Shown here piece after piece: positions 18,254 to 64,000 of a DNA stretch of 64,000 nucleotides. The stretch lies in the IMG/VR virus record IMGVR_UViG_3300017987_000001, positions 143,858 to 207,857 of that record. One strand, written 5' to 3'. Below the pieces are notes generated by a model. That model made no database searches, had not been told where the DNA came from, and saw nothing but the letters and a program-made list of their open reading frames with translations. A program made the translations under genes and the position numbers. Positions within the stretch are counted from its first letter, which is position 1; each line of letters starts with the position of its first letter.

Positions 18254-18741
18254 CGCTTCCTCCCATTGAGCTGTCGTTGCATGTTCAGGATCCTACCGGC
18301 CTCGCTAGCCGATCTGGGCACGTGCGTACGTGCTCGCTTGCGTAGTGCCTCCTCCTGTGCCCACTCCTTGGCCCTGTAGATGAGCAGCATGGTCGTAACC
18401 GACGACAGAGCGTACAGGATCGCCAGACTGATCGGAATGAGCCGCGTCAGGGTCGACACTGCAAGGGCTATCAGGGAGGCCAAGCAGATCGGAGCTGTAG
18501 CACGCGCGATATCCTTGACCAGCGGAGGATTGTTCGGGGTGCACAGTCTCACGAGGTTGGCCGTCAGGCGGAAGAGCAGATGAGTGAGCAGGAAAGCGAC
18601 GACCCCCACGTAGAGGGTCGGCGCCTTCCCGGTGCGTACGGAGAGCAGGAGTTCGAGAATGGCTGGGATGGCAAGCAGGCAGGCGTTGACGAACAGGATG
18701 GTCGCCGCGCCCATCAACACGCCGTAGATGTGCCTGCGCAT
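18250..18741 (-). CDS. multi-pass membrane protein
   Basis: About four hydrophobic segments. Confidence 0.7.
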   Translation of the reverse strand: MRRHIYGVLMGAATILFVNACLLAIPAILELLLSVRTGKAPTLYVGVVAFLLTHLLFRLTANLVRLCTPNNPPLVKDIARATAPICLASLIALAVSTLTRLIPISLAILYALSSVTTMLLIYRAKEWAQEEALRKRARTHVPRSASEAGRILNMQRQLNGRKR

Positions 18742-19316
18742 GACGCCCTCCTTGGATCGTGCCCGAGCGCCTTGGCGCGATTGATGAACGACATGTTATT
18801 CAGCACCCGCTTGCGCGCCTCGTAGAACAGCGGCATCTGCGAGCGCGCGGCGAACTCCTCACGCAGGCAGAGGTCCGCGATCGCGGCGTCTGCGCTCTTA
18901 TCACGCACCACCTCGGCGAGTGCTACCTGCAGTTGTCCGTCGTACATGGCGTGGTACTTCTCGGCCAGCTCGTCGCCGCGTCGCGGCTTGTCCGAACGCG
19001 CAATGCGCACGACCTCGCCGGTCTGCAGGTAGTACGTGCCATCGTGGTCGAACACGGCCATGATGACCTCCGTGCTCTGGGCGATGACGATCCCGCCGTG
19101 GTTGCTGGGCAGGTAGGGCGCGCAGTCCGCCACGGATTCGATCATGCCCTTGCCGCCCCGCACCTGTGCGAACGCGCCCCACTTGATCCAGCACGTGTAG
19201 CGCTTGCCGAGGTGGAGGAACGGCACATCCTCCTCGTGGCTCGTGTTGAAGCCCGACACCACCCGTCCGACGAGCGAACCGGACGGCCAGCTCTCGCGTG
19301 CTATGTCTACGAGCAT
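18714..19316 (-). CDS. hypothetical protein
   Basis: ORF in operon context. Confidence 0.65.
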   Translation of the reverse strand: MLVDIARESWPSGSLVGRVVSGFNTSHEEDVPFLHLGKRYTCWIKWGAFAQVRGGKGMIESVADCAPYLPSNHGGIVIAQSTEVIMAVFDHDGTYYLQTGEVVRIARSDKPRRGDELAEKYHAMYDGQLQVALAEVVRDKSADAAIADLCLREEFAARSQMPLFYEARKRVLNNMSFINRAKALGHDPRRASCAGTSTAC

Positions 19317-29278: not shown

Positions 29279-29353
29279 TGGAACGTCCGGCGGGGGTCGA
29301 ACCCGCATCTTGCGCCTTTAGAGAGCGCCGCACTCCCATTGTGCTACGGACGT
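29279..29353 (-). tRNA. amber suppressor tRNA (anticodon CUA)
   Basis: Acceptor ACGTCCG/CGGACGT, D stem GCAC/GTGC, anticodon arm GCGCT-CTCTAAA-GGCGC, T arm GCGGG-TTCGACC-CCCGC, U73, encoded CCA. Confidence 0.9.
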
Positions 29354-43268: not shown

Positions 43269-46166
43269 TTACCAGTACTTTTCAGGCACTCCGATTTGCT
43301 CTAAGCTCTCTTTCTTTGGCTTCTCACCCCATCTCAGCATGATCTCCGGATCGATACCGAAGCTGAAGTTCAGCCGGGGAACCACCGCGTTGTGCACCAT
43401 GCACAGCGGGAGCACGAACTCCACGACATGTTCGATCTGTTCCACCGGCACTTCGAGCATGACTGCATCGTGAATCGCAAGCAGGATCCGATACGCACAC
43501 CACGGATTCTGCTGCTTATAGAGCCACAGGTTGTACAGCGCCGTCGACAGCGTGTCGGCGACGACGGACTGAATCGGGAAGTTGACTGCCTCCCGCTCCT
43601 GCGCTGCCATCACGGACTCGTCGGGCGACACGAAGAAGTGTCGTCGCCGTCCGTACGGGTTCTCGATCCAGTGCGGGTGATTGCGTACACAACTCTTGCA
43701 CCAGTTCACGTAGTCGCGAACCTTGCTATAGCGTTCGTACCACGCATCGATAATCCGTTGAGCCTTGTCGGCATCCATGTTGGCCGCGCCCTTGGTTTCA
43801 CGATTGACTTGACGGGCGATAGCCTTCGCTCCGCGCTGATACGGGATGCCGAAGTTGATATTCTTCGCAGCGACGTACAGGTGCGGGAAGGCTTTCGATA
43901 CCTCCTCGTAGCTGCACGGTGCGCGAAGGATGTCAACGGCAACCTTAGCGTGGAGCTTAATGGGGCCAAGAGCATCAGCGATGAGATTCTTGTCGCCGCT
44001 GATGTAGGCAAGCCCACAGACCTCGGCCGACTTGTAGTCAGCTTCGATGAGGACGTAGCCATCAGGCGCAATCACACACGATCTGAGCGACTGAACATCC
44101 TCGCCCATGATCATCTTGTACTTGCTCTCCTGACGCTTACTCCAGTTCTGCAGGTTGGGTCTGCTCGATCCGTACCGGCCCGTCTCCTTCGTCTGGGAGA
44201 TCATGGTACGAATACGCCCGTCGGGATCGATATGCCCGAGGAGACCTTCGATGTACATGTTCGGATCGTAGGTCATGTCCTCAGGAACTTCGGTCATTCC
44301 GGCGGGGGGACGAAGGAAGTTCTTCGTCATCTGGTCGATCGTCTGGAAGTTGCTGATCATCTCGACGACCGGCTGCACCTTCTCTGGAGCGTCGGCTGAG
44401 AGCAGCTCCAGTACTTCGGAATCAACGGCAGGCTTGACACGCGCACGCTCCTTCTCGGGCAGCGACATCACGCGATCCCACGTCATGGCGGGCTTACCGG
44501 TAGACTTCACCGGCATCAGCCCGAAGCCACCGTCTTCAGGCGACCCGAACAGCAACTCCGCCTTCTGCTTGTACGAGCGCGGGTTGAAGTCCGGATTACC
44601 GACGCCCTTGCGTACGTCTTCGAGAAGCTCCTGCTTCTTCTGAACGTAACGCCAGAGCATCGACACCATACGATCTGCGTCGATGAGGATACCGTTCTGC
44701 TCCATCTCGAAGATGGGCAGATTCGCGGGCATGACGACGTTGTAGAACAGATCACGCACGCTCTCGTTGCCCGGCTGATCGAGCAAGCCGGTCAGTGTGA
44801 GGAAGCAGCGGAACGTGCAGTCGGCATCTTTCGCGCCATACGGAATGATCAGTTCGGCCGGAATGCCCATATACCCGGACGTCTTGGTTACGATCGCCGG
44901 ATGCGCCTTGATCCAGTTCTCCAGATCGTAGTCGTATCGTCCGAGCGGGGTGTAACGAACCGACAGCCCGGTGAGGGAGTGGTCCGCGCTCTCGTTCAGA
45001 AGGTGATCTGCAAGCATCGTGTCGAAGTACAGATACTTCATGAACGGAACGCCAATGTCCTCCAGCCACGGGGCGTCAGCGCGAGCGAAGTGACCGATCA
45101 ACCGCACGCCGGGCCGATCGATCAGCCGCTTCAGCTCGTGAGCCACGCCGATGAGTTCGGTGGATTCGGATGAGTTGTTGAAGACCCACTCGCCGTTCTC
45201 CTCGCGCAGCACGATAACCGCCGCGAAGCCTGCTGCCCACGAGAACTGAATCGTGCGCAGCTTGCCACCCGACTGAGGGGACTGACCACCCCACTCGCAG
45301 TCGAACGCGAAGTACTTCACATCGGACTCGATGAGCAGATCGACCAACTTGATCAGCTGCGACTGCGTCTCGATGGTGAAGTAGTTCTCGGCTTCTCCCG
45401 GCGCCGTACCCGGGGCGTCGGCCATCAGTCCTATGAACCGACGGATGTCCTCTTCCAGTCCGGGTGTGAGCGACGGCTCCCGCAGCGACTGCGCGGGATT
45501 AACCGTCCCGATAACCGAGACCTTCGTGGGGTCGTCATTGCGCCCCGTCTCCGTCGGTATCTTGCCCATCTCTTGCGGGTCGAACACGATGTTCGCACCA
45601 CGCACCGACTTCAGTGTCGCCTTCCTGCCGAAGAACGCTTTCACGGCGTCCGTGCCGAGCAGGAGCATGTACTTGGGCCGCACGATGCGGAACTCGTACA
45701 TGAGCAGCGGCAGGCAGTCCTTGATGTGGTCTGCCCTGAGATTTCTCCCGCCGTCTGGCGGGATGAAGCGACACACGTTCGTCACGTATGCCGAGTTGAG
45801 ATTCACGTTCAGGTTGGTGAGAATGCGAGTCAGCTCTTCCCCGGCGTTACCGCACAGGTTCCTGCCGTACTCGACCTCTTCGGTACCCGGACGCTTGCCG
45901 ACGATCATCACGTCGGACTTGACCGGACCATACTGACCGCTTCCCCAAACGTGACCGGGGATCATCGTTACGGGCGCGTAGGTGTGCGGCACGTCGCCCT
46001 TGCCCTTCACATCGACCACGTGAAACGTCATGACGTTATGCAGTGCGCGATCGAAGAGTCTGGACGAGGGCGTACCCAGCACGCGCGAGTTGTAATCCCA
46101 CGTGTCAGTGAACGCCAAGTCGTCGAGGCCGATCTCGGCCAACGAGACTTCGACTTCTTCACTCAT
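43269..46166 (-). CDS. polA: family A DNA polymerase with N-terminal UDG-like and 3'-5' exonuclease domains
   Basis: UDG-like VMIVGKRPG and YVTNVCRF; exonuclease FDCE, DTM, YGAKDA; polymerase TGRYGSSRPNLQN, ADYKSAE, AKNINFGIPY, VNFPIQS, IHDA. Confidence 0.93.
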   Translation of the reverse strand: MSEEVEVSLAEIGLDDLAFTDTWDYNSRVLGTPSSRLFDRALHNVMTFHVVDVKGKGDVPHTYAPVTMIPGHVWGSGQYGPVKSDVMIVGKRPGTEEVEYGRNLCGNAGEELTRILTNLNVNLNSAYVTNVCRFIPPDGGRNLRADHIKDCLPLLMYEFRIVRPKYMLLLGTDAVKAFFGRKATLKSVRGANIVFDPQEMGKIPTETGRNDDPTKVSVIGTVNPAQSLREPSLTPGLEEDIRRFIGLMADAPGTAPGEAENYFTIETQSQLIKLVDLLIESDVKYFAFDCEWGGQSPQSGGKLRTIQFSWAAGFAAVIVLREENGEWVFNNSSESTELIGVAHELKRLIDRPGVRLIGHFARADAPWLEDIGVPFMKYLYFDTMLADHLLNESADHSLTGLSVRYTPLGRYDYDLENWIKAHPAIVTKTSGYMGIPAELIIPYGAKDADCTFRCFLTLTGLLDQPGNESVRDLFYNVVMPANLPIFEMEQNGILIDADRMVSMLWRYVQKKQELLEDVRKGVGNPDFNPRSYKQKAELLFGSPEDGGFGLMPVKSTGKPAMTWDRVMSLPEKERARVKPAVDSEVLELLSADAPEKVQPVVEMISNFQTIDQMTKNFLRPPAGMTEVPEDMTYDPNMYIEGLLGHIDPDGRIRTMISQTKETGRYGSSRPNLQNWSKRQESKYKMIMGEDVQSLRSCVIAPDGYVLIEADYKSAEVCGLAYISGDKNLIADALGPIKLHAKVAVDILRAPCSYEEVSKAFPHLYVAAKNINFGIPYQRGAKAIARQVNRETKGAANMDADKAQRIIDAWYERYSKVRDYVNWCKSCVRNHPHWIENPYGRRRHFFVSPDESVMAAQEREAVNFPIQSVVADTLSTALYNLWLYKQQNPWCAYRILLAIHDAVMLEVPVEQIEHVVEFVLPLCMVHNAVVPRLNFSFGIDPEIMLRWGEKPKKESLEQIGVPEKYW

Positions 46167-47286
46167 ACGACCTCCTATGGCAGGCGAGCTGGAACGCTCC
46201 CGTGTCGAAGATCGGGTGCTTATAGCCTGCGCGGTCGGCGTACTTGAGGACATAGACCCACAAGTCCTCCGACCAGTAGCTGCCGGGATCCTTCTCCGGC
46301 AGGCGTACCTCCAGCATGCCCCATCGACAAAGCGAGGTGAGCGAGTCACGAAGCTTCGTGTACTTCTTTCGCTTGTCCTCTGTATCCATCACGTCAGCAT
46401 CGGACATCAGGATGATCCCTGTCTCGCCCCACGCTGCGTGAATCAGTTGACGCTGACGGTCCCCGGCGCTATCTCCGAAGATGTTCACGCCCTGACCGCC
46501 TACCGACCACACGTCGGTAATGCCCTCCATGATCACGCCGACCGGATACTGGCTGGCCCAATCATAGTTGTAGAGCACCTGCGTCTTGCGCATGCCCGGC
46601 ATCGTGAAGTACTTCGGCAGGTTCTCGGGGACATTGTCACCGATGTACCGTGCCTGATACCCCATGAGTCTCGACGATTGCCGGATCGGGAGAATGATCC
46701 TGTCATCTACGAGCGGATGAGGATCATTCGGACAGTACGCCACCTGATGAATCTCCACGAGCCGCTGCACGTTGAAACCCCGTGTCGTTTCGAGGTAGTA
46801 CCGTGCAGGGTGATGCGGATCGAGCTGCGTAATGGGAACCAGCTTCTCGGGGAGCGTCGGGACGACAGGCTTGGGAGCCTCGCCCAGATGAACCGGCAGC
46901 GACACAGTATGTCGCAGCAGCGGACTGATCAGCTTACGCAGATCCTCCTGCCGCACGCGCTTGTCGTATCTGTCTGCTGCCCGGTTCAGGTCGCAACCGT
47001 CGTTGAAGCAGTTCGCCAGTCCGAGTCCGAACTTCACCTTCGTAGCCGGATCTTCGGTATCCCAGCGATGATTGATCCAGAGTCGGAACCGCGTGTCTCC
47101 GCAAAATGGACAACACACGCGGTACTCTTCGCCGTGATAGTCCTTATCGATCACGATCGTCTCACGCTGCGTGATGAAGTCAGGCCGTACCGTGTAGCGC
47201 ATCGCTTCACCCTCCTTGGCGATCTTCACGCCGGAGGGGAATGCAAGCTTGAGCGCATTGAAGAGCTGTGGATTCAGCGGCATCAC
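46159..47286 (-). CDS. DNA primase (Zn finger + TOPRIM)
   Basis: CPFC, MEGITDVW, DAD. Confidence 0.88.
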   Translation of the reverse strand: MMPLNPQLFNALKLAFPSGVKIAKEGEAMRYTVRPDFITQRETIVIDKDYHGEEYRVCCPFCGDTRFRLWINHRWDTEDPATKVKFGLGLANCFNDGCDLNRAADRYDKRVRQEDLRKLISPLLRHTVSLPVHLGEAPKPVVPTLPEKLVPITQLDPHHPARYYLETTRGFNVQRLVEIHQVAYCPNDPHPLVDDRIILPIRQSSRLMGYQARYIGDNVPENLPKYFTMPGMRKTQVLYNYDWASQYPVGVIMEGITDVWSVGGQGVNIFGDSAGDRQRQLIHAAWGETGIILMSDADVMDTEDKRKKYTKLRDSLTSLCRWGMLEVRLPEKDPGSYWSEDLWVYVLKYADRAGYKHPIFDTGAFQLACHRRSYE

Positions 47287-48749
47287 GCAAAATCCTTGCT
47301 CTGCTCGTAGTTGCTTCTCACCTTATCCTCCGCTGATGTGTCCTCCTCTCCGGAATCACCGTCTTCGTTGAAACTATGAACCTTGTCGGACTCAACGAAG
47401 CCGCGTCCCTTCTGGTAGGTCATGTCCTTGTCGACGATATCAAATCTATTGAACTCACCCACCATGCGCGCCACGATATCCTGCTTCTTGGCGTGGCGAG
47501 CCTTCGAACCGACAATCCAGCAACGACCGCTCTCGTCAGCGGTTCCGATGGCGAAGCAGTACGAGAGCAACCACGCGAAGCTGCCAGCCTCGGCGCTGTT
47601 GAACCACTGCGGCTTGCGCCCCGGCGACTTCTTCGACTGCTCGGTACTCAGCTGCTGGAGTATTAAGAAGTTGATCTTGTACTTCGTTGCCATCCCTTTG
47701 TACGCATCAAGTAGATCATTTGCGAACTGCCGTTCAGGCTTGCCACGCTTATCCGACTCGGAGGCAGCGCGCGACACAGGAATCCACATCCAGTCGATGA
47801 CGACCAGTCGTGGTTTCTGCCCAGCGGCAATGCTCTGCCTGATGCGCTCTTCAATTTCGATCGGCGCCCAACCATCGGACGAACGATCGATTAGCGACAC
47901 GTACTGCTTGCAAGCGAAAGAAGCCCTCTTAACAGCATCACGCGTCTGCTCGTCCAAATCACCAACACGCTTGCCTTCCAGCTTCTCACGCGCAATACGA
48001 CCAACGCACGAAATCAGGCGTGGACGCAGCTCGTCCGGCGAGGTCTCGTACGTGAAGTACAGCACATATTGCTTGCGCGCCGCACACCCACCGGCGAGCT
48101 GGAGCGCCAGCGTAGTCTTGCCTCCGCCCGTCGGGCCGAGGATTCCGAGTACGTCTGACGGGAACGTCCCGCCGTTCATCAGCAGGTCGATCACGGCAGT
48201 ACCGAGCGGCTCACGCTCTTCACCGAATACTGTGTCGTCATCGACATCGAACGGATCGATCTCATACATGTCGCTGACGTGCCGCTTGCGGTATTCGCCT
48301 TCGATCAGCTCGTGAACCTTCGCCGCGTCTCCGTGCGTCGTGCTGAACTGGCCAACTGCATTGAGGTACAGCCGACCGAGGAACGCCTTGATAAGCTCCT
48401 TTCCGTACTTCGGTGTCAGTGTCGCCACGTCCACCGCATAGATCTCATGAATGAGGTTGGTCGCACGCTCGTACAGTACCGGCTCGACAATCCCCTGCGC
48501 CCGCATGATCGCGGGGCAGATGTCGGCGAGGTACTGCGCGGGCGGCTGCTCGTTGTACTTCTCCCAGTACGCCTTGGCGGCGATCCAGACGATCTGGAAC
48601 TCGCCTTCGGTAGCCGGGTCGAAGTCCTGTGGATGCAGCTTGAGCAACGCTGTCGGCGATACCTCGTGACAGCGAATCGCGTAGGTGAGCAGTCGGACCA
48701 GAGCTTCGCGCCCTTTGAACTCGCGAACGAGATCGGGCAACAGACCCAT
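47283..48749 (-). CDS. DnaB-like replicative helicase
   Basis: GPTGGGKTT, FTYE, VVIDW, LQQLS. Confidence 0.88.
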   Translation of the reverse strand: MGLLPDLVREFKGREALVRLLTYAIRCHEVSPTALLKLHPQDFDPATEGEFQIVWIAAKAYWEKYNEQPPAQYLADICPAIMRAQGIVEPVLYERATNLIHEIYAVDVATLTPKYGKELIKAFLGRLYLNAVGQFSTTHGDAAKVHELIEGEYRKRHVSDMYEIDPFDVDDDTVFGEEREPLGTAVIDLLMNGGTFPSDVLGILGPTGGGKTTLALQLAGGCAARKQYVLYFTYETSPDELRPRLISCVGRIAREKLEGKRVGDLDEQTRDAVKRASFACKQYVSLIDRSSDGWAPIEIEERIRQSIAAGQKPRLVVIDWMWIPVSRAASESDKRGKPERQFANDLLDAYKGMATKYKINFLILQQLSTEQSKKSPGRKPQWFNSAEAGSFAWLLSYCFAIGTADESGRCWIVGSKARHAKKQDIVARMVGEFNRFDIVDKDMTYQKGRGFVESDKVHSFNEDGDSGEEDTSAEDKVRSNYEQSKDFA

Positions 48750-52762: not shown

Positions 52763-52838
52763 TGGCGCACCCAGCAGGACTCGAACCTGCAAGCTCTTGG
52801 TCCGCAACCAAGTGTCCTATCCATTAGACGATGGGTGC
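52763..52838 (-). tRNA. tRNA-Arg(GCG)
   Basis: CTTGG-TTGCGGA-CCAAG; CCA. Confidence 0.9.
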
Positions 52839-52846
52839 GCCGACTC

Positions 52847-53362
52847 CTACGCCCGACCGAAGTACGGCGTCCAATCCGCGTAGCCAAGGCGTACGGCTCG
52901 CTCACGGATCAGTAGTGCGCGGGTTGGTACCCACGGCTCGCGAAGGAGCTTCATTCCAGCCTCCTTCGGCGTGCGGTCATCCTTGGTGTTGTTGCACGGC
53001 TTGCATGCAGCAACAACGTTCTTCCACGAATGCTTCCCGTCACGACAGAGCGGGAGGACGTGGTCGATGGTGGCCGAGTTGTCCGACAGGTGCCGCCCGC
53101 AGTACTGGCACGTGAATCCGTCACGGGCAAGAACGTTCTTCTTGTTCAGCCCAATGCGCCGACTGCCCGGGATCACCACGTACTTGACCAGCGCGATGAC
53201 GCTCGGCAGCGGGAAGCTCTGCGTCGCCGAATGCACCTCATCGCTCCAGTACTCGTACACATCAACCTTCTGCTTGAGCATCAGCCCAAGCGCCCGCGTC
53301 CAGTGAATCATAGATAACGGCTCACCGTTCGCGTTCAGAAGCAGCACCTTTCTCTGCTGCAT
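52847..53362 (-). CDS. HNH endonuclease (McrA-like)
   Basis: CQYCG, TIDHVLP, ACKPCNNTK. Confidence 0.92.
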   Translation of the reverse strand: MQQRKVLLLNANGEPLSMIHWTRALGLMLKQKVDVYEYWSDEVHSATQSFPLPSVIALVKYVVIPGSRRIGLNKKNVLARDGFTCQYCGRHLSDNSATIDHVLPLCRDGKHSWKNVVAACKPCNNTKDDRTPKEAGMKLLREPWVPTRALLIRERAVRLGYADWTPYFGRA

Positions 53363-57429: not shown

Positions 57430-57674
57430 TACCTTTGTTCAGCGCCGACGTGGTCTTCGTGCGGCGTGTCCACCCAGAAGACCTTCTCCATCGGTATCCG
57501 TCTGACGATCGGGCGTCCCCATTCATCCTTGTCGGGTAGCTCGATGCAGAAGCATCCTGCCTTCACGTAGAAGCGCCGCACGTCCGGGTACCGTTTCGGC
57601 GTACTCGCTGGGTCGAATACGAACTCCACCCAGTACGGCGCCTTCTTCTTCGCTTTCATATCCCAAACGTCCAT
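57429..57674 (-). CDS. hypothetical protein
   Basis: Last base of the TAG is G1 of tRNA-Gly. Confidence 0.55.
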   Translation of the reverse strand: MDVWDMKAKKKAPYWVEFVFDPASTPKRYPDVRRFYVKAGCFCIELPDKDEWGRPIVRRIPMEKVFWVDTPHEDHVGAEQR

Positions 57675-58798
57675 TTCGCCACGTCTATCGCCTTTGGATC
57701 ACCGATGGCCTTCTTCGGGTCGTCCGAAAGCTTGACCACCGGGACGTTGTCGATCTCGACCAGCTTGATGACGATGTTGGCTGATATGGTGCCGGGCACG
57801 TCGTTCGTCAGATTCGTACCGATCCCGAATGCGACCTTGGTCTGCTGAGCGAACTCGCGCTGAAGGCTGATGCACTTCGGCACGTCCAGCGAGTCGCTGA
57901 AGATGATGGTCTTCGACATCGGATCGACGCGTAGCCACTTGTAGTGATTGATCATCCGCCGCGCGAACTCCTTCGAGTTACCGGAATCCTGACGGACACC
58001 GTCGAACAGCCGAGCAAGCTTGCCGTCGAAGTCCTGCAGGAATGCGCTGGTGCCGAACGTGTCGGGGAGCGCGATGCCGAGATCGCCCTCATAGACGTCG
58101 TTCCATGCCTCCAATGCGAACTTGTTGGCGTGTCGCAAACCTACCAGCGCGGAAATCGCTTGGATCCACTCGTGCGCCATCGTACCGATGGGCTTGACCC
58201 CGTGCTTCATGGCGAAGTGTACGTTGCTCGTTCCGATGAAGTTCGGGAACTTCTTCAGCGCTCCTACGACCATGTCCTGCATGTGGTACGAGTAGCGCCG
58301 CCGCGTTCCGAACTCGGCGAACCGGCAGTCTTCGGCAAGCAGCATGCCCGCCTTCTTCAGCGCCTGCTCCTTCTGCTCGTCCCAGTTGGGGCGAGGCTGC
58401 TGCTGCGCCATGATTTGCTCGGTGACGATCGCGAGCAGTGGCACCTCCCAGTAGATAGTTTCGGCCCACAGGCCACTGATCTCGATCTCCGTACCAGCGT
58501 CGGTCGGGGTGATCTTCACGAGGTGCGGATTCGGCTGAAAGTGCTCCAGCCAGTCGATGTACCAGCCTTCCAAGAAGGGGCACTTCTCACGGAGGAACAG
58601 CGACTCCTTGTCGGTCAGCTTCGCGCGGCTGTAGCCCCACATGTGAGAGCTGACGTACTTCGCCATCACCTTCGTGACGGGCTGATGAGCATTTCGGTTG
58701 ACGAACCTGTACGTAGCCTGCGCCTTGGGGAACTTCTTGAGGACAGCTTGCCCCATCGTAAGCTTGTACAGGTCGGTATCAAGGATCGAAGGTTCCAC
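57656..58798 (-). CDS. pncB: nicotinate phosphoribosyltransferase
   Basis: LDTDLYKLTM, EFGTRRR, GTSN, GTMAHEW, VRQDSG, FSDSL, FGIGT, KLSD. Confidence 0.93.
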   Translation of the reverse strand: MEPSILDTDLYKLTMGQAVLKKFPKAQATYRFVNRNAHQPVTKVMAKYVSSHMWGYSRAKLTDKESLFLREKCPFLEGWYIDWLEHFQPNPHLVKITPTDAGTEIEISGLWAETIYWEVPLLAIVTEQIMAQQQPRPNWDEQKEQALKKAGMLLAEDCRFAEFGTRRRYSYHMQDMVVGALKKFPNFIGTSNVHFAMKHGVKPIGTMAHEWIQAISALVGLRHANKFALEAWNDVYEGDLGIALPDTFGTSAFLQDFDGKLARLFDGVRQDSGNSKEFARRMINHYKWLRVDPMSKTIIFSDSLDVPKCISLQREFAQQTKVAFGIGTNLTNDVPGTISANIVIKLVEIDNVPVVKLSDDPKKAIGDPKAIDVAKWTFGI

Positions 58799-59421
58799 TA
58801 CAGCTGCAGCCGTGCGGTGTGCTCGATGAGCACGCCCGCCTTGGCCATCTCCTCGATCGCTTCGACCGTCGTCTTCGGATCCACGCCCTTGCACGCGTCC
58901 AACAGGACGCTTGCGACGTAGCCCCTCTTGACGGCGTCGAGCGCGGTCGCCTTGACGCAGTAGTCCGTGGCAAGGCCGCAGATGATGAGGTTGTCATGCG
59001 GAGGCGTACCGGCGTGCGCCAACGTCTGCAGCATGGCCGTCGGATTCCTGCCCGCGTCCTCGAAGCCGGAATAGCTGTCGAACTGCGGGTTGGTACCCTT
59101 CTCGACGATGAGCTTGCCCTCAACGACCAGCAGCTGACTGTGCAGCTCGTTGCCGGGAGTCTCGACCACGCAGTGATCGGGCCAGAACATCTGTGGCTGC
59201 CCGTTCAGCACGCCCATCGTGAATGGCTCCGTGCCCTGCATCGACGCGAAGCTCTTGTGCATCGGCGGGTGCATGTCCTTCGTGTAGATGATGGGCAATC
59301 GCGAGAAGGCGAACTTGTTGATGACCCGATTGACGACCGGGAGTATGTGGACGGCATCCGGTACGGCAAGGCTGCCGCCGATGAAGTCGTTCTGCATGTC
59401 GACGACTATGAGCGTCGGCAT
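58798..59421 (-). CDS. pncA: nicotinamidase
   Basis: VDMQNDF..GSLAV, DMHP, WPDHCV, YSGF, GLATDYCV. Confidence 0.95.
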   Translation of the reverse strand: MPTLIVVDMQNDFIGGSLAVPDAVHILPVVNRVINKFAFSRLPIIYTKDMHPPMHKSFASMQGTEPFTMGVLNGQPQMFWPDHCVVETPGNELHSQLLVVEGKLIVEKGTNPQFDSYSGFEDAGRNPTAMLQTLAHAGTPPHDNLIICGLATDYCVKATALDAVKRGYVASVLLDACKGVDPKTTVEAIEEMAKAGVLIEHTARLQL

Positions 59422-60203
59422 TATGTTCCTCTCTGGAAGACGAGCAGACCCGCGCCCGACGGCGGGATCTCGCGCTTGTGCTGCGTGCGCTGATAAATGT
59501 CCAATACCTTCTTGTGGAGATCTTCGAGACCCTCGGGGATCGTGTCGCCCTCACTAATGGCGTACACGATCTTGTCGAGGTCGTCGTAGGACGCACCGAG
59601 TTCCTCTTCGTCCGTCTGGCCTTCCCACAGCCCCGCGCTCGGAGCCTTGGTGATGATTGCTTCGGGAACGCCCTTAACGCGCGCGAGCTGCCGCACTTCG
59701 CCCTTCAGCAGCCCCATGATCGGCTCGATGTCGATGCCGCCATCGCCGTACTTCGTGAAGTAGCCCAGCACGTCCTCGGTGAGGTTGGTCGTGCCGACGA
59801 CAAGCAGGTTGTGCGCGTTCGCCACGGCGTAGAGCGCCACCATACGAAGCCGCGACTTCGTGTTCGCGCGGGCCATCTTGCTGCTTCGCAAGTGCCCCGA
59901 AAGCGCACCCAGCTCCAGCGTCTTGAACGTCGGGAACAGGTCGATCTGCTCGGTCGCGATACCGAACGTCTTCGCGACCTCCCGCGCGTGCTCGGCGCCG
60001 ATCTTCGAGCTTTCACAGTCGAGGATCAGCCCGCGTACGCGATTCGCGCCGAGCGCGCCTACGCACAGCGCTGCGACGAGCGACGAGTCCACACCGCCGC
60101 TCAAGCCGACGACGACGCCGCTCGCGCCGACGCCCGCGATGTAGTTCCTGATCCAGTCCTGAATGGCCTCGATCGTCTTCTGTTCGTCGAGTCTCTCAAT
60201 CAC
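59421..60203 (-). CDS. nadE: NH3-dependent NAD+ synthetase
   Basis: GLSGGVDS, NTKSRLRM, GYFTKYGDGG, KAPSAGLWEGQTDE. Confidence 0.95.
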   Translation of the reverse strand: MIERLDEQKTIEAIQDWIRNYIAGVGASGVVVGLSGGVDSSLVAALCVGALGANRVRGLILDCESSKIGAEHAREVAKTFGIATEQIDLFPTFKTLELGALSGHLRSSKMARANTKSRLRMVALYAVANAHNLLVVGTTNLTEDVLGYFTKYGDGGIDIEPIMGLLKGEVRQLARVKGVPEAIITKAPSAGLWEGQTDEEELGASYDDLDKIVYAISEGDTIPEGLEDLHKKVLDIYQRTQHKREIPPSGAGLLVFQRGT

Positions 60204-61992: not shown

Positions 61993-62291
61993 TTCTCATC
62001 CGTGGCTTCGGCGAGCATCTGCAGGTACAGCTTCTTCCTGTCCTCGGAGGACAGCGGATGCTCGCCACGCATGCCGCACACCATCAGCTCGTTGAGCAGC
62101 GTCTTGGTGCCCATCGAACGGATGCGCAGCAGGCTGTTGGTTGCGGCACGAAGATGATTGATGTCGCCGGTTCGCAAGTAGCTGAGAAGCTGAAGGCTCA
62201 TATGCCCCGCCTCGTCCGCCGTCGCGAACACCGTATCGACCATCGTCTTCGGTACGTCAGGACTCGTCACGATCGTCACATCTTCAGACAT
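61983..62291 (-). CDS. hypothetical protein
   Basis: AAGGAG RBS; stop is nt 8-10 of tRNA-Glu(UUC). Confidence 0.65.
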   Translation of the reverse strand: MSEDVTIVTSPDVPKTMVDTVFATADEAGHMSLQLLSYLRTGDINHLRAATNSLLRIRSMGTKTLLNELMVCGMRGEHPLSSEDRKKLYLQMLAEATDEKPA

Positions 62292-62302
62292 GTCGCTCCT
62301 TC

Positions 62303-62376
62303 TGGATGCCCCACCGGGACTCGAACCCGGAACCCTCTGCTTCAAAGGCAGATGCTCTGCTTTGAGCTATGGGGCA
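62303..62376 (-). tRNA. tRNA-Gln(UUG)
   Basis: TCTGC-CTTTGAA-GCAGA; CCA. Confidence 0.88.
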
Positions 62377-62387
62377 CCCTTCGTTGG

Positions 62388-62462
62388 TGGCTCCACGGGG
62401 AGGACTTGAACCTCCAACCCTCCGGTTAACAGCCGGATGCACTACCGTTGTGCTACCGTGGA
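62388..62462 (-). tRNA. tRNA-Asn(GUU)
   Basis: TCCGG-CTGTTAA-CCGGA; CCA. Confidence 0.92.
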
Positions 62463-62464
62463 AA

Positions 62465-62538
62465 TGGTGGACCGACCGGGACTCGAACCCGGATCTCCTG
62501 CTTGCAAAACAGGGGTTCTCCCTTTGAACTATCAGCCC
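62465..62538 (-). tRNA. tRNA-Ala(UGC)
   Basis: CCTGT-TTTGCAA-GCAGG; CCA. Confidence 0.9.
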
Positions 62539-62541
62539 AGA

Positions 62542-62617
62542 TGGTTGCCCCGGGAGGACTTGAACCTCCAACTTCCTGATCCAGAATCAGGCGTTCTGCC
62601 AATTGAACTACGGGGCA
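62542..62617 (-). tRNA. tRNA-Gln(CUG)
   Basis: CCTGA-TTCTGGA-TCAGG; CCA. Confidence 0.92.
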
Positions 62618-62618
62618 A

Positions 62619-62695
62619 TGGTGGCCGCACTGGGAATCGAACCCAGAACCTCCCGATTAAGAGTCGGGGACTCTACGCAATTGAGTTACACGGCC
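62619..62695 (-). tRNA. tRNA-Lys(CUU)
   Basis: CCCGA-CTCTTAA-TCGGG; CCA. Confidence 0.92.
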
Positions 62696-62703
62696 GGTAT
62701 ATA

Positions 62704-62779
62704 GAGAAGGCGACGAAGAGGTGTAGAGATCCGTTTACATGGCAATTGTATGTAATCCCTACGGGCATTCGCCTTACTC
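62704..62779 (-). ncRNA. Y-RNA-like element 1 (short)
   Basis: AAGGCGA-AUG...GUAGGGAUU/GAUCUCUAC...UUCG-UCGCCUU. Confidence 0.65.
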
Positions 62780-62784
62780 ACAGA

Positions 62785-62862
62785 TGGTGGGAACGACCGG
62801 ATTTGAACCGGTAACACCGAGTGCTTCAAACTCGTGCTCTACCTGAGTTGAGCTACGTTCCC
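62785..62862 (-). tRNA. tRNA-Phe(GAA)
   Basis: CGAGT-TTGAAGC-ACTCG; CCA. Confidence 0.9.
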
Positions 62863-62889
62863 AAATTCGTTTTCCCGCTCCGCAAGAGA

Positions 62890-62965
62890 TGGTAGGCGCG
62901 GCAGGATTCGAACCTGCGATACCCAGTTTGTAAGACTGGTGTCTTAGCCGCTAGACTACGCGCCT
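62890..62965 (-). tRNA. tRNA-Val(UAC)
   Basis: CCAGT-CTTACAA-ACTGG; CCA. Confidence 0.92.
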
Positions 62966-62975
62966 GCCCAAGTAT

Positions 62976-63085
62976 GTGAACAGCGACAAGAAGTGGAGAG
63001 TGATAGCCTCCATAGGCTTCCCCCGGTAATCGGGGGATCAGGAATTGAACTTGATGTACACCCTACCGGGCATTCGCTGTATCAC
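62976..63085 (-). ncRNA. Y-RNA-like element 2
   Basis: ACAGCGA-AUG...GGGUGUACAU...CUUG-UCGCUGU. Confidence 0.65.
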
Positions 63086-63088
63086 GCG

Positions 63089-63176
63089 TGGTGGGGGCAG
63101 ACGGAGTCGAACCGCCAAAGCCTTTCGGCGGGAGATTTACAGTCTCTTGGGATCGCCACGTTCCCTGTGTACCCCC
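63089..63176 (-). tRNA. tRNA-Tyr(GUA), atypical acceptor/D-arm junction
   Basis: GAGA-CTGTAAA-TCTC; long variable arm; CCA. Confidence 0.82.
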
Positions 63177-63184
63177 AGTGAAGC

Positions 63185-63320
63185 TGCGTCGACTAGAAAT
63201 GGAAGAGTCGTTTTTGCGCTCTACCCACTGAGCTACCGCCGCATCAAGAGCGGCGGGCTGGACTCGAACCAGCGACCTCATCCTCCGTATGGATGTAGAC
63301 CCGTCCGGGCATTCGACGCA
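63185..63320 (-). ncRNA. Y-RNA-like element 3 with circularly permuted tRNA module (YrlA-like)
   Basis: UGCGUCGA-AUG...; T arm GCUGG-UUCGAGU-CCAGC; acceptor CCGCCGC/GCGGCGG closed by UCUUGAU; then D arm; ...CUAG-UCGACGCA. Confidence 0.75.
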
Positions 63321-63328
63321 ACATTTAT

Positions 63329-63397
63329 GTGAACGGACGACGAATAGGTAGGAGTCACCTTTATAATGTAGACCCCAAGGACATTCGTCCGTGTCAC
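63329..63397 (-). ncRNA. Y-RNA-like element 4 (short)
   Basis: ACGGACGA-AUG...GGGGUCUACAU...ACUCC...UUCG-UCGUCCGU. Confidence 0.65.
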
Positions 63398-63402
63398 GCT
63401 TG

Positions 63403-63482
63403 TGGTGGTGCGAGCTGGAGTCGAACCAGCGACCTCCTGTGTATCAGACAGGTGCTCTAACCAAGGGCTGAGCTACCGCACC
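63403..63482 (-). tRNA. tRNA-Ile(GAU)
   Basis: CCTGT-CTGATAC-ACAGG; CCA. Confidence 0.92.
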
Positions 63483-63524
63483 ACTTACGTTTGTGCATTC
63501 CGTATTCGATTTTCAAAGAGCAGC

Positions 63525-63596
63525 GTCGGCGACGAGTTGGGTTGTAGAGATCTGGTATGCTTAAATGGCATGTAATCCCTACGTTCATTCGCCGAC
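63525..63596 (-). ncRNA. Y-RNA-like element 5 (short)
   Basis: GUCGGCGA-AUG...GUAGGGAUU/GAUCUCUAC...CUCG-UCGCCGAC. Confidence 0.65.
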
Positions 63597-63607
63597 ACAC
63601 TTCTAGA

Positions 63608-63757
63608 GTGAAGCAGGCACGACAAGAATTGACGAGTCAACCCCGTCAGGGTCAGCTGCTCTGCCACTGAGCTATACGCCCATCAATGGGCGCAGAAGGA
63701 TTCGAACCCCCGACCCGCTGATTATGATGTAGACCCGATCAGCATTCGTACCTACAC
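63608..63757 (-). ncRNA. Y-RNA-like element 6 with circularly permuted tRNA module (YrlA-like)
   Basis: AGGUACGA-AUG...; UCAGC; T arm with UUCGAAU; acceptor UGCGCCC/GGGCGUA closed by AUUGAU; D arm; GCUGA; ...CUUG-UCGUGCCU. Confidence 0.75.
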
Positions 63758-63773
63758 TCGATTGTCAAAGAGC

Positions 63774-63850
63774 TGGTGGATCCGCTCGGACTCGAACCGA
63801 GGACCGTCCGCTTATGAGGCGGATGCTCTAACCGACTGAGCTACGGATCC
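63774..63850 (-). tRNA. tRNA with CAU anticodon (Ile2 or elongator Met)
   Basis: TCCGC-CTCATAA-GCGGA; CCA. Confidence 0.9.
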
Positions 63851-63852
63851 AC

Positions 63853-63927
63853 TGGAGGGCCGGACTGGATTCAAACGAGCATAAGCACGATCTGCAGTCG
63901 TGCGCCTAGTCGTTCGGCCACCGACCC
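63853..63927 (-). tRNA. tRNA-Cys(GCA), weak T stem
   Basis: CACGA-CTGCAGA-TCGTG; U73; T stem GCTCG/CCAGT mispaired; CCA. Confidence 0.72.
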
Positions 63928-64000
63928 TCTTGAATCTCCTTCCAGTCCTTCTCGGACTGTTCCATGTCGATGATCTCGCGGAGGAAGAACTTCCCCATCC
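63906..64000 (-). CDS. 3' end of a CDS overlapping tRNA-Cys (partial)
   Basis: ...MGKFFLREIIDMEQSEKDWKEIQEGRWPND*; TAG inside the tRNA D arm. Confidence 0.4.
   Translation of the reverse strand, partial: MGKFFLREIIDMEQSEKDWKEIQEGRWPND

What the first reader, a model, noticed from the sequence alone, without database searches (positions are those of the whole stretch)
63185..63320. Circularly permuted tRNA module with an ACG stem-loop (element 3)
Seen, 5' to 3': CAUCC-AUACGGA-GGAUG (anticodon-like arm, ACG), variable loop, T arm, acceptor 3' strand, UCUUGAU loop, acceptor 5' strand, full D arm. There is no CCA. This matches the YrlA tRNA-mimic layout, but keeps an anticodon-like loop for an isoacceptor missing from the window. 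It could be a mimic or decoy, or a precursor of a permuted tRNA-Arg.
Basis: partly seen in the sequence, partly recalled or inferred. Interest (0 to 1): 0.7.

Follow-up and report, generated by a model that had tools for sequence, protein, structure and literature searches.

The report
Phage Y RNA that mimics tRNA
This 136-base element is a phage copy of a known bacterial "Y RNA" (YrlA type), a Ro60-partner RNA shaped like a tRNA, and its "ACG anticodon" is an incidental loop sequence, not evidence of a hidden arginine tRNA.

Summary
On the minus strand, 63320→63185 reads: paired 5'/3' ends, GUCGAAUG motif, CUAC, a 5-bp/7-nt hairpin (loop AUACGGA), AGGUC, T arm, a 7-bp acceptor-like stem closed by UCUUGAU, a D arm, and no CCA.

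It is a YrlA-type Y RNA. It matches Rfam YrlA over its full length (48 bits, E 1e-9; the published phage ET08 YrlA scores 37). It also matches a covariance model built from 41 other relatives at 120.5 bits (E 4e-35).

The phage encodes a Ro60/Rsr protein. Five more Y-RNA-like elements lie in the same tRNA array.

The hairpin belongs to a widespread YrlA subclass found next to Rsr genes in bacteria and phages. Across 34 distinct loops, U33, R37 and A/C38 never change. The triplet is unconstrained, with 29 different triplets and uniform base use that includes A34.

A permuted tRNA-Arg precursor is unlikely. The element lacks A20, has U73 rather than G73, and has no encoded CCA, which 37 of 38 phage tRNAs carry. 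The phage encodes no RtcB ligase. A related phage carries both a GUA-loop YrlA and a real tRNA-Tyr(GUA).

Verdict: a new member of a known kind. The complete anticodon-arm mimic is an under-described feature.

The parts
63185..63320 (-). Whole YrlA-type Y RNA (the finding, called E3 here)
   Evidence: Rfam RF02553 matches 63183-63319 at 48.4 bits, model positions 1-114. Family model R1 matches 63178-63330 at 120.5 bits, E 4e-35.
63313..63319 (-). Y stem 1, 5' strand GCGUCGA. It pairs with 63186-63192.
   Evidence: Fold and R1 alignment. All 7 pairs of this helix show changes on both sides across the family.
63186..63192 (-). Y stem 1, 3' strand UCGACGC
63310..63317 (-). GUCGAAUG, which fits the GNCGAAN0-1G motif proposed as the Ro60/Rsr recognition site
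   Evidence: Read. The motif is defined in Chen et al. 2014, PMC4201824. It is invariant or nearly invariant in alignment A1.
63299..63306 (-). Y stem 2, 5' strand GGAcGGGU. It pairs with ACUCuUCC at 63201-63208.
   Evidence: R1 alignment. 6 of 7 pairs covary in the family.
63201..63208 (-). Y stem 2, 3' strand
63295..63298 (-). CUAC, the conserved YUAY of YrlA RNAs
   Evidence: Described in Chen 2014. Invariant in A1.
63279..63295 (-). Anticodon-arm mimic: 5-bp stem and 7-nt loop AUACGGA, with triplet ACG at 63286-63288. Pairs 27:43 and 28:42 can equally be made by C63216 and A63215, which follow the D arm.
   Evidence: The composite stem is shown by covariation.
63274..63278 (-). 5-nt variable loop AGGUC. 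C48 can pair with G15 (Levitt pair).
63257..63273 (-). T arm GCUGG-UUCGAGU-CCAGC
   Evidence: The T stem covaries.
63236..63256 (-). Acceptor-like 7-bp stem (CCGCCGC/GCGGCGG) closed by the loop UCUUGAU. It has no free end and no CCA.
   Evidence: All 7 pairs covary in the family.
63215..63235 (-). U8 A9, D arm GCUC-AGUGGGUA-GAGC, then G26 C27 A28
   Evidence: The D loop lacks A20.
63613..63752 (-). Second YrlA-type RNA of the "open" design. The anticodon-like stem UCAGC/GCUGA is formed across the module.
   Evidence: RF02553 at 35.5 bits. R1 at 76 bits. Fold.
63523..63598 (-). Short Y-RNA-like stem with the same CGAAUG...UACAU and ...UCGUCGCC ends, but no tRNA module
   Evidence: z-score -4.3.
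63333..63392 (-). Short Y-RNA-like stem
62980..63080 (-). Y-RNA-like element with two small hairpins in place of the tRNA module
   Evidence: RF02553 at 20.6 bits. R1 at 28.1 bits, full length. Fold.
62707..62775 (-). Short Y-RNA-like stem

Best explanation
The element is a phage-encoded Y RNA of the YrlA type. It is very probably transcribed with the surrounding minus-strand tRNA array.

Its 5' and 3' ends pair into a two-part stem that carries the GNCGAAUG motif. This stem is the docking site for the phage's own Ro60/Rsr protein, which is encoded about 48 kb away on the same strand.

The middle of the RNA folds into a complete tRNA-shaped module: T arm, an acceptor-like stem closed by a loop, D arm, 5-nt variable loop and a full anticodon-arm mimic. 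This module serves as the effector or handle end of the Ro60-Y RNA particle. It presents a tRNA shape to tRNA-binding enzymes (in studied bacteria, PNPase and tRNA-modifying and tRNA-processing enzymes) during infection.

The ACG triplet is not read as an anticodon. Only the loop's frame (U33, R37, A/C38) is under selection.

What is shown: family membership, the structure, the presence of Rsr, and the constraint pattern of the loop.

What is inferred: transcription, Rsr binding, and the partner of the tRNA-like end.
For: **Family membership.**
- RF02553 matches over its full length at E 1e-9. The published ET08 phage YrlA scores lower, at 37.4 bits.
- A model built from 41 relatives, with this element left out, scores it at 120.5 bits, E 4e-35, with all pairs standard.

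**Structure.**
- On alignment A1, 99.0% of cells are paired and 25 of 35 pairs change on both sides. 0 of 500 shuffles reach this, and slid controls give 37-50% paired.

**Rsr link.**
- The phage has a 572-aa Rsr. It matches PDB 2nvo Rsr at E 4e-16, the Pfam domain vWA_Ro60 above its cut-off, and phrog_850 at E 2e-35.
- The CAUCC-hairpin relatives mostly lie about 0.3-2 kb from an Rsr gene that is 40-50% identical to the phage's. This holds in 48 of 66 metagenome loci and 31 of 40 genome loci; most of the rest are non-Y-RNA pattern hits or short contigs.
- Some of these loci are classical rtcR/rsr/Y RNA/rtcB/rtcA operons.

**Anticodon-arm mimic.**
- The composite anticodon stem covaries. Pair 28:42 is G-C in 61 sequences, C-G in 2 and A-U in 1 (this element).
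- Other phages have CCG/CGG plus GG:CC, or GGC/GCC plus CC:GG.
- Across 34 distinct loops, U33 is present in 34/34, R37 in 34/34 and A/C38 in 34/34, while positions 34-36 have uniform base composition.

**Tertiary structure.** The nucleotides for tRNA tertiary pairs are all present: U8-A14, G15-C48, G18G19 with the UUCGA T loop, and G53-C61.
Against: - The Rfam score is below the curated cut-off (48.4 against 69 bits).
- Rsr is not adjacent. Chen et al. found nearly all YrlA genes within 4 kb of Ro60, whereas here the distance is about 48 kb.
- There is no RNA-level evidence. Only DNA metagenome runs hold the sequence.
- Rsr binding could not be modelled (not folded).
- The role of the tRNA-like end is not known even for characterised YrlA RNAs.
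Confidence: 0.82

Rival explanations
1. It is the precursor of a circularly permuted tRNA-Arg(ACG). The flanking stem would be cut out, the ends joined at 26/27-28/29, and the acceptor loop opened by RNase P/Z. The product would be a decoding tRNA that fills the missing ACG isoacceptor.
For: All tRNA parts are present and in register. When un-permuted in silico, the sequence is called tRNA-Arg(acg). No tRNA-Arg(ACG) gene exists in the genome. Wang et al. 2018 raise this possibility for YrlA RNAs in general.
Against: - The D loop lacks A20 and the discriminator is U. The phage's three real tRNA-Arg genes have A20, G73 and an encoded CCA.
- 37 of 38 phage tRNAs encode CCA, and this element does not.
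- The phage encodes no RtcB and no CCA-adding enzyme.
- No bulge-helix-bulge is visible at the junction.
- Relatives have acceptor stems of 7-18 bp.
- Triplets include many A34 forms that decoding tRNAs avoid.
- Related phage G001 carries both a GUA-loop YrlA and a real tRNA-Tyr(GUA), and G003 has three YrlA genes and no tRNA at all.
Confidence: 0.03
2. It is a two-piece, CCA-tailed tRNA mimic. RNase P would cut 5' of G63242 (the stem is 7 bp, as in M. smegmatis YrlA). The 3' side would be trimmed and CCA added, giving a nicked Y RNA with a free acceptor end. That end would protect the RNA or allow it to be charged.
For: - M. smegmatis YrlA, which has a 7-bp acceptor stem, is cleaved by RNase P in vivo and in vitro and gains CCA (Chen 2014).
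- This element also has exactly 7 bp stacked on a 5-bp T stem.
- U73-C74 is encoded, so only CA would need to be added.
- In 66 relatives, the seven T-stem-proximal acceptor pairs are standard base pairs in nearly every sequence.
Against: - Some relatives have stems of 13-18 bp, which argues against a general requirement.
- S. Typhimurium YrlA is not cleaved.
- There are no RNA data for this phage.
- Charging is unlikely without A20.
Confidence: 0.3
3. It is a decoy or competitive inhibitor. The complete anticodon arm would bait enzymes that attack or handle anticodon loops (anticodon nucleases of host defence systems, or repair enzymes). This would protect the phage's tRNA supply.
For: - Hughes et al. 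2020 propose that the YrlA tRNA-like domain competitively inhibits an anticodon nuclease.
- The loop frame is strictly kept while the triplet varies quickly between close relatives.
- The element sits inside a 39-gene phage tRNA array.
- Bacterial relatives sit in rtcB/rtcA RNA-repair operons.
Against: - The triplet turns over at about the rate of the presumably unconstrained acceptor-closing loop and has uniform composition. Drift explains this as well as an arms race does.
- No nuclease partner is known.
- Nothing was tested directly.
Confidence: 0.15
4. It is a dead relic: the remains of a tandem tRNA duplication, with no function.
For: The tRNA array is dense. The T arm and variable loop are nearly identical to those of the neighbouring tRNA-Ile.
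Against: - All 35 modelled pairs are intact.
- The structure is kept by compensatory changes across phyla and phages.
- The sequence is identical but for one base in an independent sample.
- An Rsr gene is kept in the genome.
Confidence: 0.02

Closest known systems
YrlA of mycobacteriophage ET08 and other Ro60-encoding phages (Chen et al. 2014, RNA 20:1715; Rfam RF02553)
   Same: - It is a phage-encoded Y RNA with a GNCGA-type motif, YUAY, a T arm placed 5' of the D arm, and a closed acceptor-like stem.
- ET08 has the same composite anticodon-like arm: CUC/GAG plus C27U28:A42G43, with the 7-nt loop AUUGAAA and then AGGUC.
- It matches model R1 over its full length at 59 bits.
   Different: - In ET08 the RNA lies directly upstream of the Ro60 gene. 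Here it lies about 48 kb from Rsr, inside the tRNA array, together with five further Y-RNA-like elements.
- Chen et al. label the hairpin upstream of T a variable (V) stem-loop, not an anticodon arm.
Salmonella Typhimurium YrlA (crystal structure 6CU1; Wang et al. 2018)
   Same: It has a Ro60-binding stem plus an L-shaped tRNA mimic held by the canonical tertiary pairs, a closed acceptor stem and no CCA.
   Different: The Salmonella RNA has no anticodon loop, because its anticodon-like stem runs straight into the Ro60 module, and its acceptor stem is 6 bp. Here a 5-bp stem with a 7-nt U-turn-type loop is present as well, and the acceptor stem is 7 bp.
Mycobacterium smegmatis YrlA
   Same: It has a 7-bp acceptor-like stem, the feature that makes it an RNase P substrate and a target for CCA addition.
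   Different: Processing has been shown there and is untested here. I could not fetch its sequence to compare the hairpin.
Circularly permuted tRNA genes of Cyanidioschyzon merolae and Thermofilum (Soma 2007; Chan 2011)
   Same: The 3' half precedes the 5' half, the acceptor ends are joined by a linker, and the termini pair.
   Different: Those genes are matured by the splicing endonuclease and a ligase into real, charged tRNAs. Here there is no bulge-helix-bulge, no arginine identity elements and no ligase gene in the phage, and the flanks are a conserved Ro60-binding module.
Two-piece (permuted) tmRNA
   Same: It is a tRNA mimic made from a permuted gene and held together by pairing.
   Different: Two-piece tmRNA has a free CCA end, is charged with alanine and carries a tag reading frame. 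None of these is present here. The Rfam permuted-tmRNA model gives only a chance-level match at the neighbouring element (19.7 bits, E 1.5).

Membership tests
YrlA / bacterial Y RNA (RF02553; Chen et al. 2014) | GNCGAAN0-1G motif near the 5' end | tested here: met
   GUCGAAUG at 63317-63310. The motif is defined.
YrlA / bacterial Y RNA (RF02553; Chen et al. 2014) | The 5' and 3' ends pair into the stem that carries the Ro60 site | tested here: met
   Stems 1 and 2 are seen in the fold and in the model alignment. 13 of 14 pairs covary in relatives.
YrlA / bacterial Y RNA (RF02553; Chen et al. 2014) | tRNA-like module in the order T arm, closed acceptor-like stem, D arm, with conserved YUAY and tertiary-pair nucleotides | tested here: met
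YrlA / bacterial Y RNA (RF02553; Chen et al. 2014) | Score at or above Rfam's gathering cut-off (69 bits) | tested here: not met
   48.4 bits, full length, E 1e-9. The published ET08 YrlA scores 37.4 bits, and hairpin-bearing copies in bacterial rsr operons also stay below the cut-off. The cut-off therefore excludes accepted members.
YrlA / bacterial Y RNA (RF02553; Chen et al. 2014) | A Ro60/Rsr gene in the same genome, usually within 4 kb on the same strand | tested here: inconclusive
   Rsr is present on the same strand at genome positions 46470-48188. It is about 48 kb from the RNA, not within 4 kb.
YrlA / bacterial Y RNA (RF02553; Chen et al. 2014) | Bound by Ro60/Rsr | not testable with these tools
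   The complex prediction was not folded. This needs co-immunoprecipitation.
Hairpin-bearing YrlA subclass defined here (model R1) | Full-length match to a model built without this element, including the composite 5-bp anticodon-like stem and the 7-nt loop | tested here: met
   120.5 bits, E 4e-35, model positions 1-151, no non-standard pair.
Circularly permuted pre-tRNA | All tRNA parts present in permuted order | tested here: met
   ARAGORN calls tRNA-Arg(acg) after in-silico un-permutation.
Circularly permuted pre-tRNA | Identity elements and ends of the cognate tRNA (A20, G/A73, CCA), as in the genome's own tRNA-Arg genes | tested here: not met
   No A20, U73 and no CCA, against A20, G73 and CCA in all three real tRNA-Arg genes. 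37 of 38 phage tRNAs encode CCA.
Circularly permuted pre-tRNA | Processing signals and enzymes: a bulge-helix-bulge at the junction and an RNA ligase | tested here: not met
   By inspection, no 3-nt bulge / 4-bp helix / 3-nt bulge is present. The junction strands are UA and AAAAAC. The phage genome has no RtcB. Host enzymes are unknown.
Canonical tRNA (RF00005) | Detected as a tRNA in its native order | tested here: not met
   Neither ARAGORN nor the Rfam tRNA model calls it.

The most novel reading that the evidence does not exclude
A large, previously unremarked subclass of YrlA Y RNAs carries a complete anticodon-arm mimic. It occurs in phages and in Verrucomicrobiota, Acidobacteriota, Planctomycetota and Betaproteobacteria.

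The stem is built from three strands, with the Ro60 module inserted at position 28/29. The loop frame (U33, R37, A/C38) is invariant and the triplet changes freely.

If the loop is the working end, acting as bait, inhibitor or sensor for anticodon-loop nucleases or repair enzymes, then this phage uses Ro60 plus a set of Y RNAs to defend its own tRNA array in a tRNA-cleavage arms race.
Probability: 0.2. Interest if true: 0.75.

Novelty: new member of a known kind. Interest (0 to 1): 0.5.

Why it matters
What the tRNA-like end of bacterial Y RNAs does is still an open question.

This element, and the roughly 65 relatives found from it, show that many YrlA RNAs mimic the whole tRNA, including an anticodon stem-loop. 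The U-turn frame of that loop is strictly conserved, while the triplet is free to vary.

This narrows the search for the partner to proteins that recognise a generic anticodon loop together with the tRNA elbow. It also makes the published "nuclease inhibitor" idea directly testable.

The phage itself is notable. It is a 208-kb environmental phage that keeps its own Ro60, six Y-RNA-like genes and 39 tRNAs. That makes it a compact system in which to study Ro60-Y RNA function during infection.

For annotation: the element should be labelled a Y RNA, not a tRNA or pseudo-tRNA. Rfam's cut-off misses this subclass.

Tried and rejected
**Searches that gave nothing useful**
- Megablast of 62600-64000 against GenBank phages: no match.
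- The search for related loci with the Rsr protein in viral contigs: no relative.
- Laying contigs of four metagenome runs on the region confirmed the sequence in an independent sample. It gave no informative variants; most hits were cross-matches to generic tRNAs.
- No RNA run holds the sequence, so expression is untested.
- Complex prediction of Rsr with the RNA was returned "not folded" and is not evidence either way.
- Supplementary files of Chen 2014 and the 2020 Annual Review (PMC10870794) are not held. I therefore could not check how those authors draw the hairpin, or see the Rfam seed.

**Readings considered and rejected**
- A false "dimeric tRNA" match. The two acceptor strands pair with each other across a 7-nt loop, and the flanks are a Y stem.
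- Twister-sister ribozyme: 19.4 bits, E 4 (0.23 on the 801-base stretch). Permuted tmRNA: 19.7 bits, E 1.5. Both are chance-level.
- A purely local 5-bp hairpin as the family's structure. In relatives the upstream A28 faces C42, whereas the strand after the D arm supplies a standard pair in 64 of 66 sequences.
- Loop identity as mimicry of a specific tRNA. 13 of 34 loops equal real tRNA loops, but this follows from the shared frame. The triplet's composition and turnover look unconstrained.

Full report
**Setting.** The window is the last 64 kb of a 207,857-bp virus record. The record's ends overlap by 123 bp, so it is a closed genome. The sequence recurs in sediment and seawater metagenomes. 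One independent seawater run has a 36-kb contig covering 62751-63900 with a single mismatch.

The minus strand carries a tRNA array that runs across the record's ends. ARAGORN finds 38 tRNAs. A class-II tRNA-Tyr(GUA) at 63093-63176 is missed by ARAGORN and shows up only as a weak tRNA-Sec match.

**The observation.** Read on the minus strand from 63320 to 63185, the element contains these parts in order:
- GCGUCGA, AUG, GGAcGGGU(C), and UA; the C that ends the second stem, UA and the first C of the arm spell CUAC.
- CAUCC-AUACGGA-GGAUG, the anticodon-like arm.
- AGGUC, the variable loop.
- GCUGG-UUCGAGU-CCAGC, the T arm.
- CCGCCGC-UCUUGAU-GCGGCGG, a 7-bp acceptor-like stem closed by a loop.
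- UA, then GCUC-AGUGGGUA-GAGC, the D arm.
- G, then CAAAAAC, then (G)ACUCuUCC, then AUUUCUAG, then UCGACGC.

When I joined the halves at 26|27 in a script, ARAGORN called a canonical tRNA-Arg(acg) (I appended the CCA in that test). The nucleotides for U8-A14, G15-C48, G18G19 with the T loop, and G53-C61 are all in place.

**What it is.** An E-value search of Rfam matches the YrlA family (RF02553) from model position 1 to 114 at 63183-63319. The score is 48.4 bits, E 1e-9, with a 14-nt insertion exactly where the hairpin sits. This is below Rfam's cut-off of 69 bits. However, the YrlA of mycobacteriophage ET08, published in Chen et al. 2014, scores only 37.4 bits in the same test.

Chen et al. 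define YrlA by these features:
- a GNCGAAN0-1G motif near the 5' end, proposed as the Ro60 site;
- a conserved YUAY;
- a T arm that precedes a closed acceptor-like stem and a D arm;
- in many members, a fourth stem-loop upstream of T, which they call V.

The element has GUCGAAUG, CUAC and all the arms.

The genome also encodes a Ro60/Rsr ortholog of 572 aa at genome positions 46470-48188 on the minus strand. It matches the D. radiodurans Rsr structure 2nvo at E 4e-16. It matches the Pfam domain vWA_Ro60 above its cut-off and TROVE just below, and it matches PHROG 850 at E 2e-35. Its closest phage relative is Myxococcus phage Mx1 at 45% identity. Mx1 has an unannotated YrlA-like RNA in its own tRNA array.

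**More Y RNAs in the window.** Five other elements share the CGAAUG...GGG..UACAU 5' side and the ..CUC..UUGUCGNC 3' side:
- One, at 63613-63752, has a tRNA-like module of the "open" design. Its anticodon-like stem UCAGC/GCUGA is formed between the strand before the variable loop and the strand after the D arm. It scores 35.5 bits with RF02553 and 76 bits with my model.
- Four (about 63523-63598, 63333-63392, 62980-63080 and 62707-62775) are stems without a tRNA module, like YrlB.

**Relatives.** A first pattern scan of viral contigs gave about 25 YrlA-like RNAs in phage contigs, some in tandem triplets.

I then searched with a pattern that fixed only CUACAUCC, GGANG, .GGU. and UUCNA and left the 7 loop bases free. 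It found:
- 2 viral loci;
- 66 metagenome loci, one of which is the window's own record;
- 40 loci in species-representative genomes.

After removing coding or random hits and real tRNAs, 66 distinct full sequences remained.

Most loci carry an Rsr gene 40-50% identical to the phage's, usually within 0.3-2 kb of the RNA. The loci are of two kinds:
- Some are classical bacterial operons: rtcR, rsr, Y RNAs, rtcB, rtcA.
- Others are tRNA-dense, phage-like arrays.

Named hosts include Chthoniobacter flavus, Vitreoscilla massiliensis, Pedosphaera, Luteolibacter, Pyrinomonadaceae, Blastocatellia and Phycisphaerae. In these loci the copies that pass Rfam's cut-off are the neighbouring open-type YrlA genes. 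The hairpin-bearing copies stay below it.

**Structure of the family.** I aligned 41 non-redundant relatives, leaving the window's element out (A1). I then counted pairs for a structure of seven helices. 99.0% of cells form standard pairs, and 25 of 35 pairs show changes on both sides. None of 500 shuffles reaches any measure, and sliding the partners drops pairing to 37-50%.

A covariance model from A1 (R1) scores the window's element at 120.5 bits, E 4e-35. The match is full length and has no non-standard pair. This is the strongest membership test.

**The anticodon-like arm.** In the relatives the 3' strand is GGACG. The upstream strand CAUCC would put A28 opposite C42. The two bases after G26, which follow the D arm, give C27-G43 and G28-C42 instead.

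Across the 66 sequences, pair 28:42 taken this way is standard in 64: G-C in 61, C-G in 2, and A-U in 1 (the window's element). Taken from the upstream strand it is standard in only 1.

The arm is therefore a composite 5-bp helix. Positions 27-28 come from the strand after the D arm, and positions 29-31 come from the upstream strand. The Ro60 module enters between 28 and 29. Both forms give 5 bp.

Homologs not selected by my pattern change both parts together:
- CCG/CGG with GG:CC;
- GGC/GCC with CC:GG;
- ET08 has CUC/GAG with AG:CU.

This is covariation for the hairpin itself. ET08's published YrlA thus already contains this arm (loop AUUGAAA, followed by AGGUC). From its position, the arm is what Chen et al. 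call the V stem-loop. The structural paper on Salmonella YrlA states that YrlA lacks an anticodon loop. I found no paper in the library that describes the arm as an anticodon mimic.

**Is ACG meaningful?** Among 34 distinct loops:
- position 33 is U in all 34;
- position 37 is a purine in all 34;
- position 38 is A or C in all 34;
- position 32 is never G.

Positions 34-36 have near-uniform base composition (position 34: A 11, G 10, U 7, C 6) and show 29 different triplets. By contrast, A34 occurs in 3% of 748 real tRNAs from the same loci.

Between close relatives the triplet changes about as fast as the first three bases of the acceptor-closing loop. For pairs with 0-3 stem differences the triplet is shared in 38% of pairs, against 44% for the closing loop. 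For 4-7 differences the figures are 10% and 9%. The loop's frame is therefore under strong constraint and the triplet is not.

The idea that ACG stands in for a missing isoacceptor fails elsewhere:
- The complete 191-kb phage G001 has a YrlA with loop AUGUAAA and also a real tRNA-Tyr(GUA).
- The 62.7-kb phage G003 has Rsr and three YrlA genes but no tRNA at all.
- In 4 of 7 tRNA-rich loci, a real tRNA with the same triplet lies nearby.

In this phage, CGN codons are already served by tRNA-Arg(GCG) and tRNA-Arg(UCG).

**Could it become a tRNA-Arg?** Several points argue against it:
- The phage's three real tRNA-Arg genes all have GGA in the D loop (A20), G73 and an encoded CCA. The element has AGUGGGUA, U73 and UCU. 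From established knowledge, A20 and C35 are the main ArgRS identity elements in bacteria.
- 37 of 38 phage tRNAs encode CCA.
- The phage has no RtcB and no CCA-adding enzyme.
- No bulge-helix-bulge is visible at the junction.
- Relatives have acceptor stems from 7 up to 18 bp.

A permuted pre-tRNA is therefore unlikely.

One tRNA-type processing step is plausible. M. smegmatis YrlA has a 7-bp acceptor stem, is cut by RNase P and receives CA to complete a CCA tail. This element also has 7 bp and an encoded U73-C74.

**Mechanism proposed.**
- Shown: family membership, the structure, the Rsr gene and the loop constraints.
- Inferred: co-transcription with the array. It lies on the same strand, 9 nt upstream of tRNA-Tyr, and no promoter-like site and only chance-level terminator-like sites were found in 62200-64000.
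- Inferred: release by tRNA-processing nucleases, binding of the phage Rsr to the GUCGAAUG stem, and use of the tRNA-shaped end as the effector handle of the particle.

In Deinococcus and Salmonella, Y RNA tethers Rsr to PNPase. Hughes et al. suggest that the tRNA-like domain may inhibit an anticodon nuclease. The conserved U-turn frame with a free triplet fits a partner that recognises a generic anticodon loop together with the elbow. It does not prove one.

**Novelty.** The element is a new phage member of a known RNA family.

Three things appear under-described:
- how general the complete anticodon-arm mimic is, and its three-strand construction;
- the fact that Rfam's threshold misses this subclass;
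- a phage with six Y-RNA-like genes embedded in its tRNA array, far from its Rsr gene.

Noticed in passing
window 63613-63752, 63523-63598, 63333-63392, 62980-63080, 62707-62775 (all minus strand): Five further Y-RNA-like elements lie between tRNA genes. One has an open-type tRNA module and four are bare stems. That makes six Y-RNA-like genes in 1.1 kb, about 48 kb from the phage's Rsr gene.
   Followed up: partly
window 63093-63176 (-): A class-II tRNA-Tyr(GUA) with a long variable arm and an encoded CCA. ARAGORN misses it, and it appears only as a 32-bit tRNA-Sec match.
   Followed up: partly
window 29279-29353 (-): A solitary tRNA with anticodon CUA (ARAGORN calls it "tRNA-Pyl"; Rfam tRNA model 63 bits), far from the array. 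It could be an amber suppressor, which may point to TAG readthrough or recoding in this phage.
   Followed up: no
window 57656-60203 (-): Three NAD-salvage genes sit inside the tRNA array: nicotinate phosphoribosyltransferase, an isochorismatase-family protein (possibly a nicotinamidase) and NAD synthase. The set resembles phage NAD-reconstitution counter-defence gene sets.
   Followed up: no
window 52763-52838 (-): A tRNA-Arg with anticodon GCG. Bacteria normally use ACG (read as ICG) for this codon box.
   Followed up: no
L013 5159-5303 and 5511-5633 (Myxococcus phage Mx1, OR576727.2, about 45158-45302 and 45510-45632): Two YrlA-like RNAs (63 and 40.5 bits with model R1) are unannotated in the GenBank record. 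They lie in the Mx1 tRNA array, about 12 kb upstream of its TROVE-domain protein.
   Followed up: partly
G003 (IMGVR_UViG_3300047319_000963, 62.7 kb) 18437-18871: Three tandem YrlA genes (two open, one with the hairpin) lie directly after an Rsr gene, in a complete phage genome that has no tRNA gene.
   Followed up: partly
L101, L138, L108, L110, L114, L161 (metagenome loci): Rsr loci usually hold 2-4 tandem Y RNAs of mixed design. Only the open-type copies pass Rfam's YrlA cut-off, so standard annotation would miss the hairpin-bearing copies.
   Followed up: partly
window 52847-53362 (-): An HNH endonuclease ORF lies between tRNA genes of the array.
   Followed up: no
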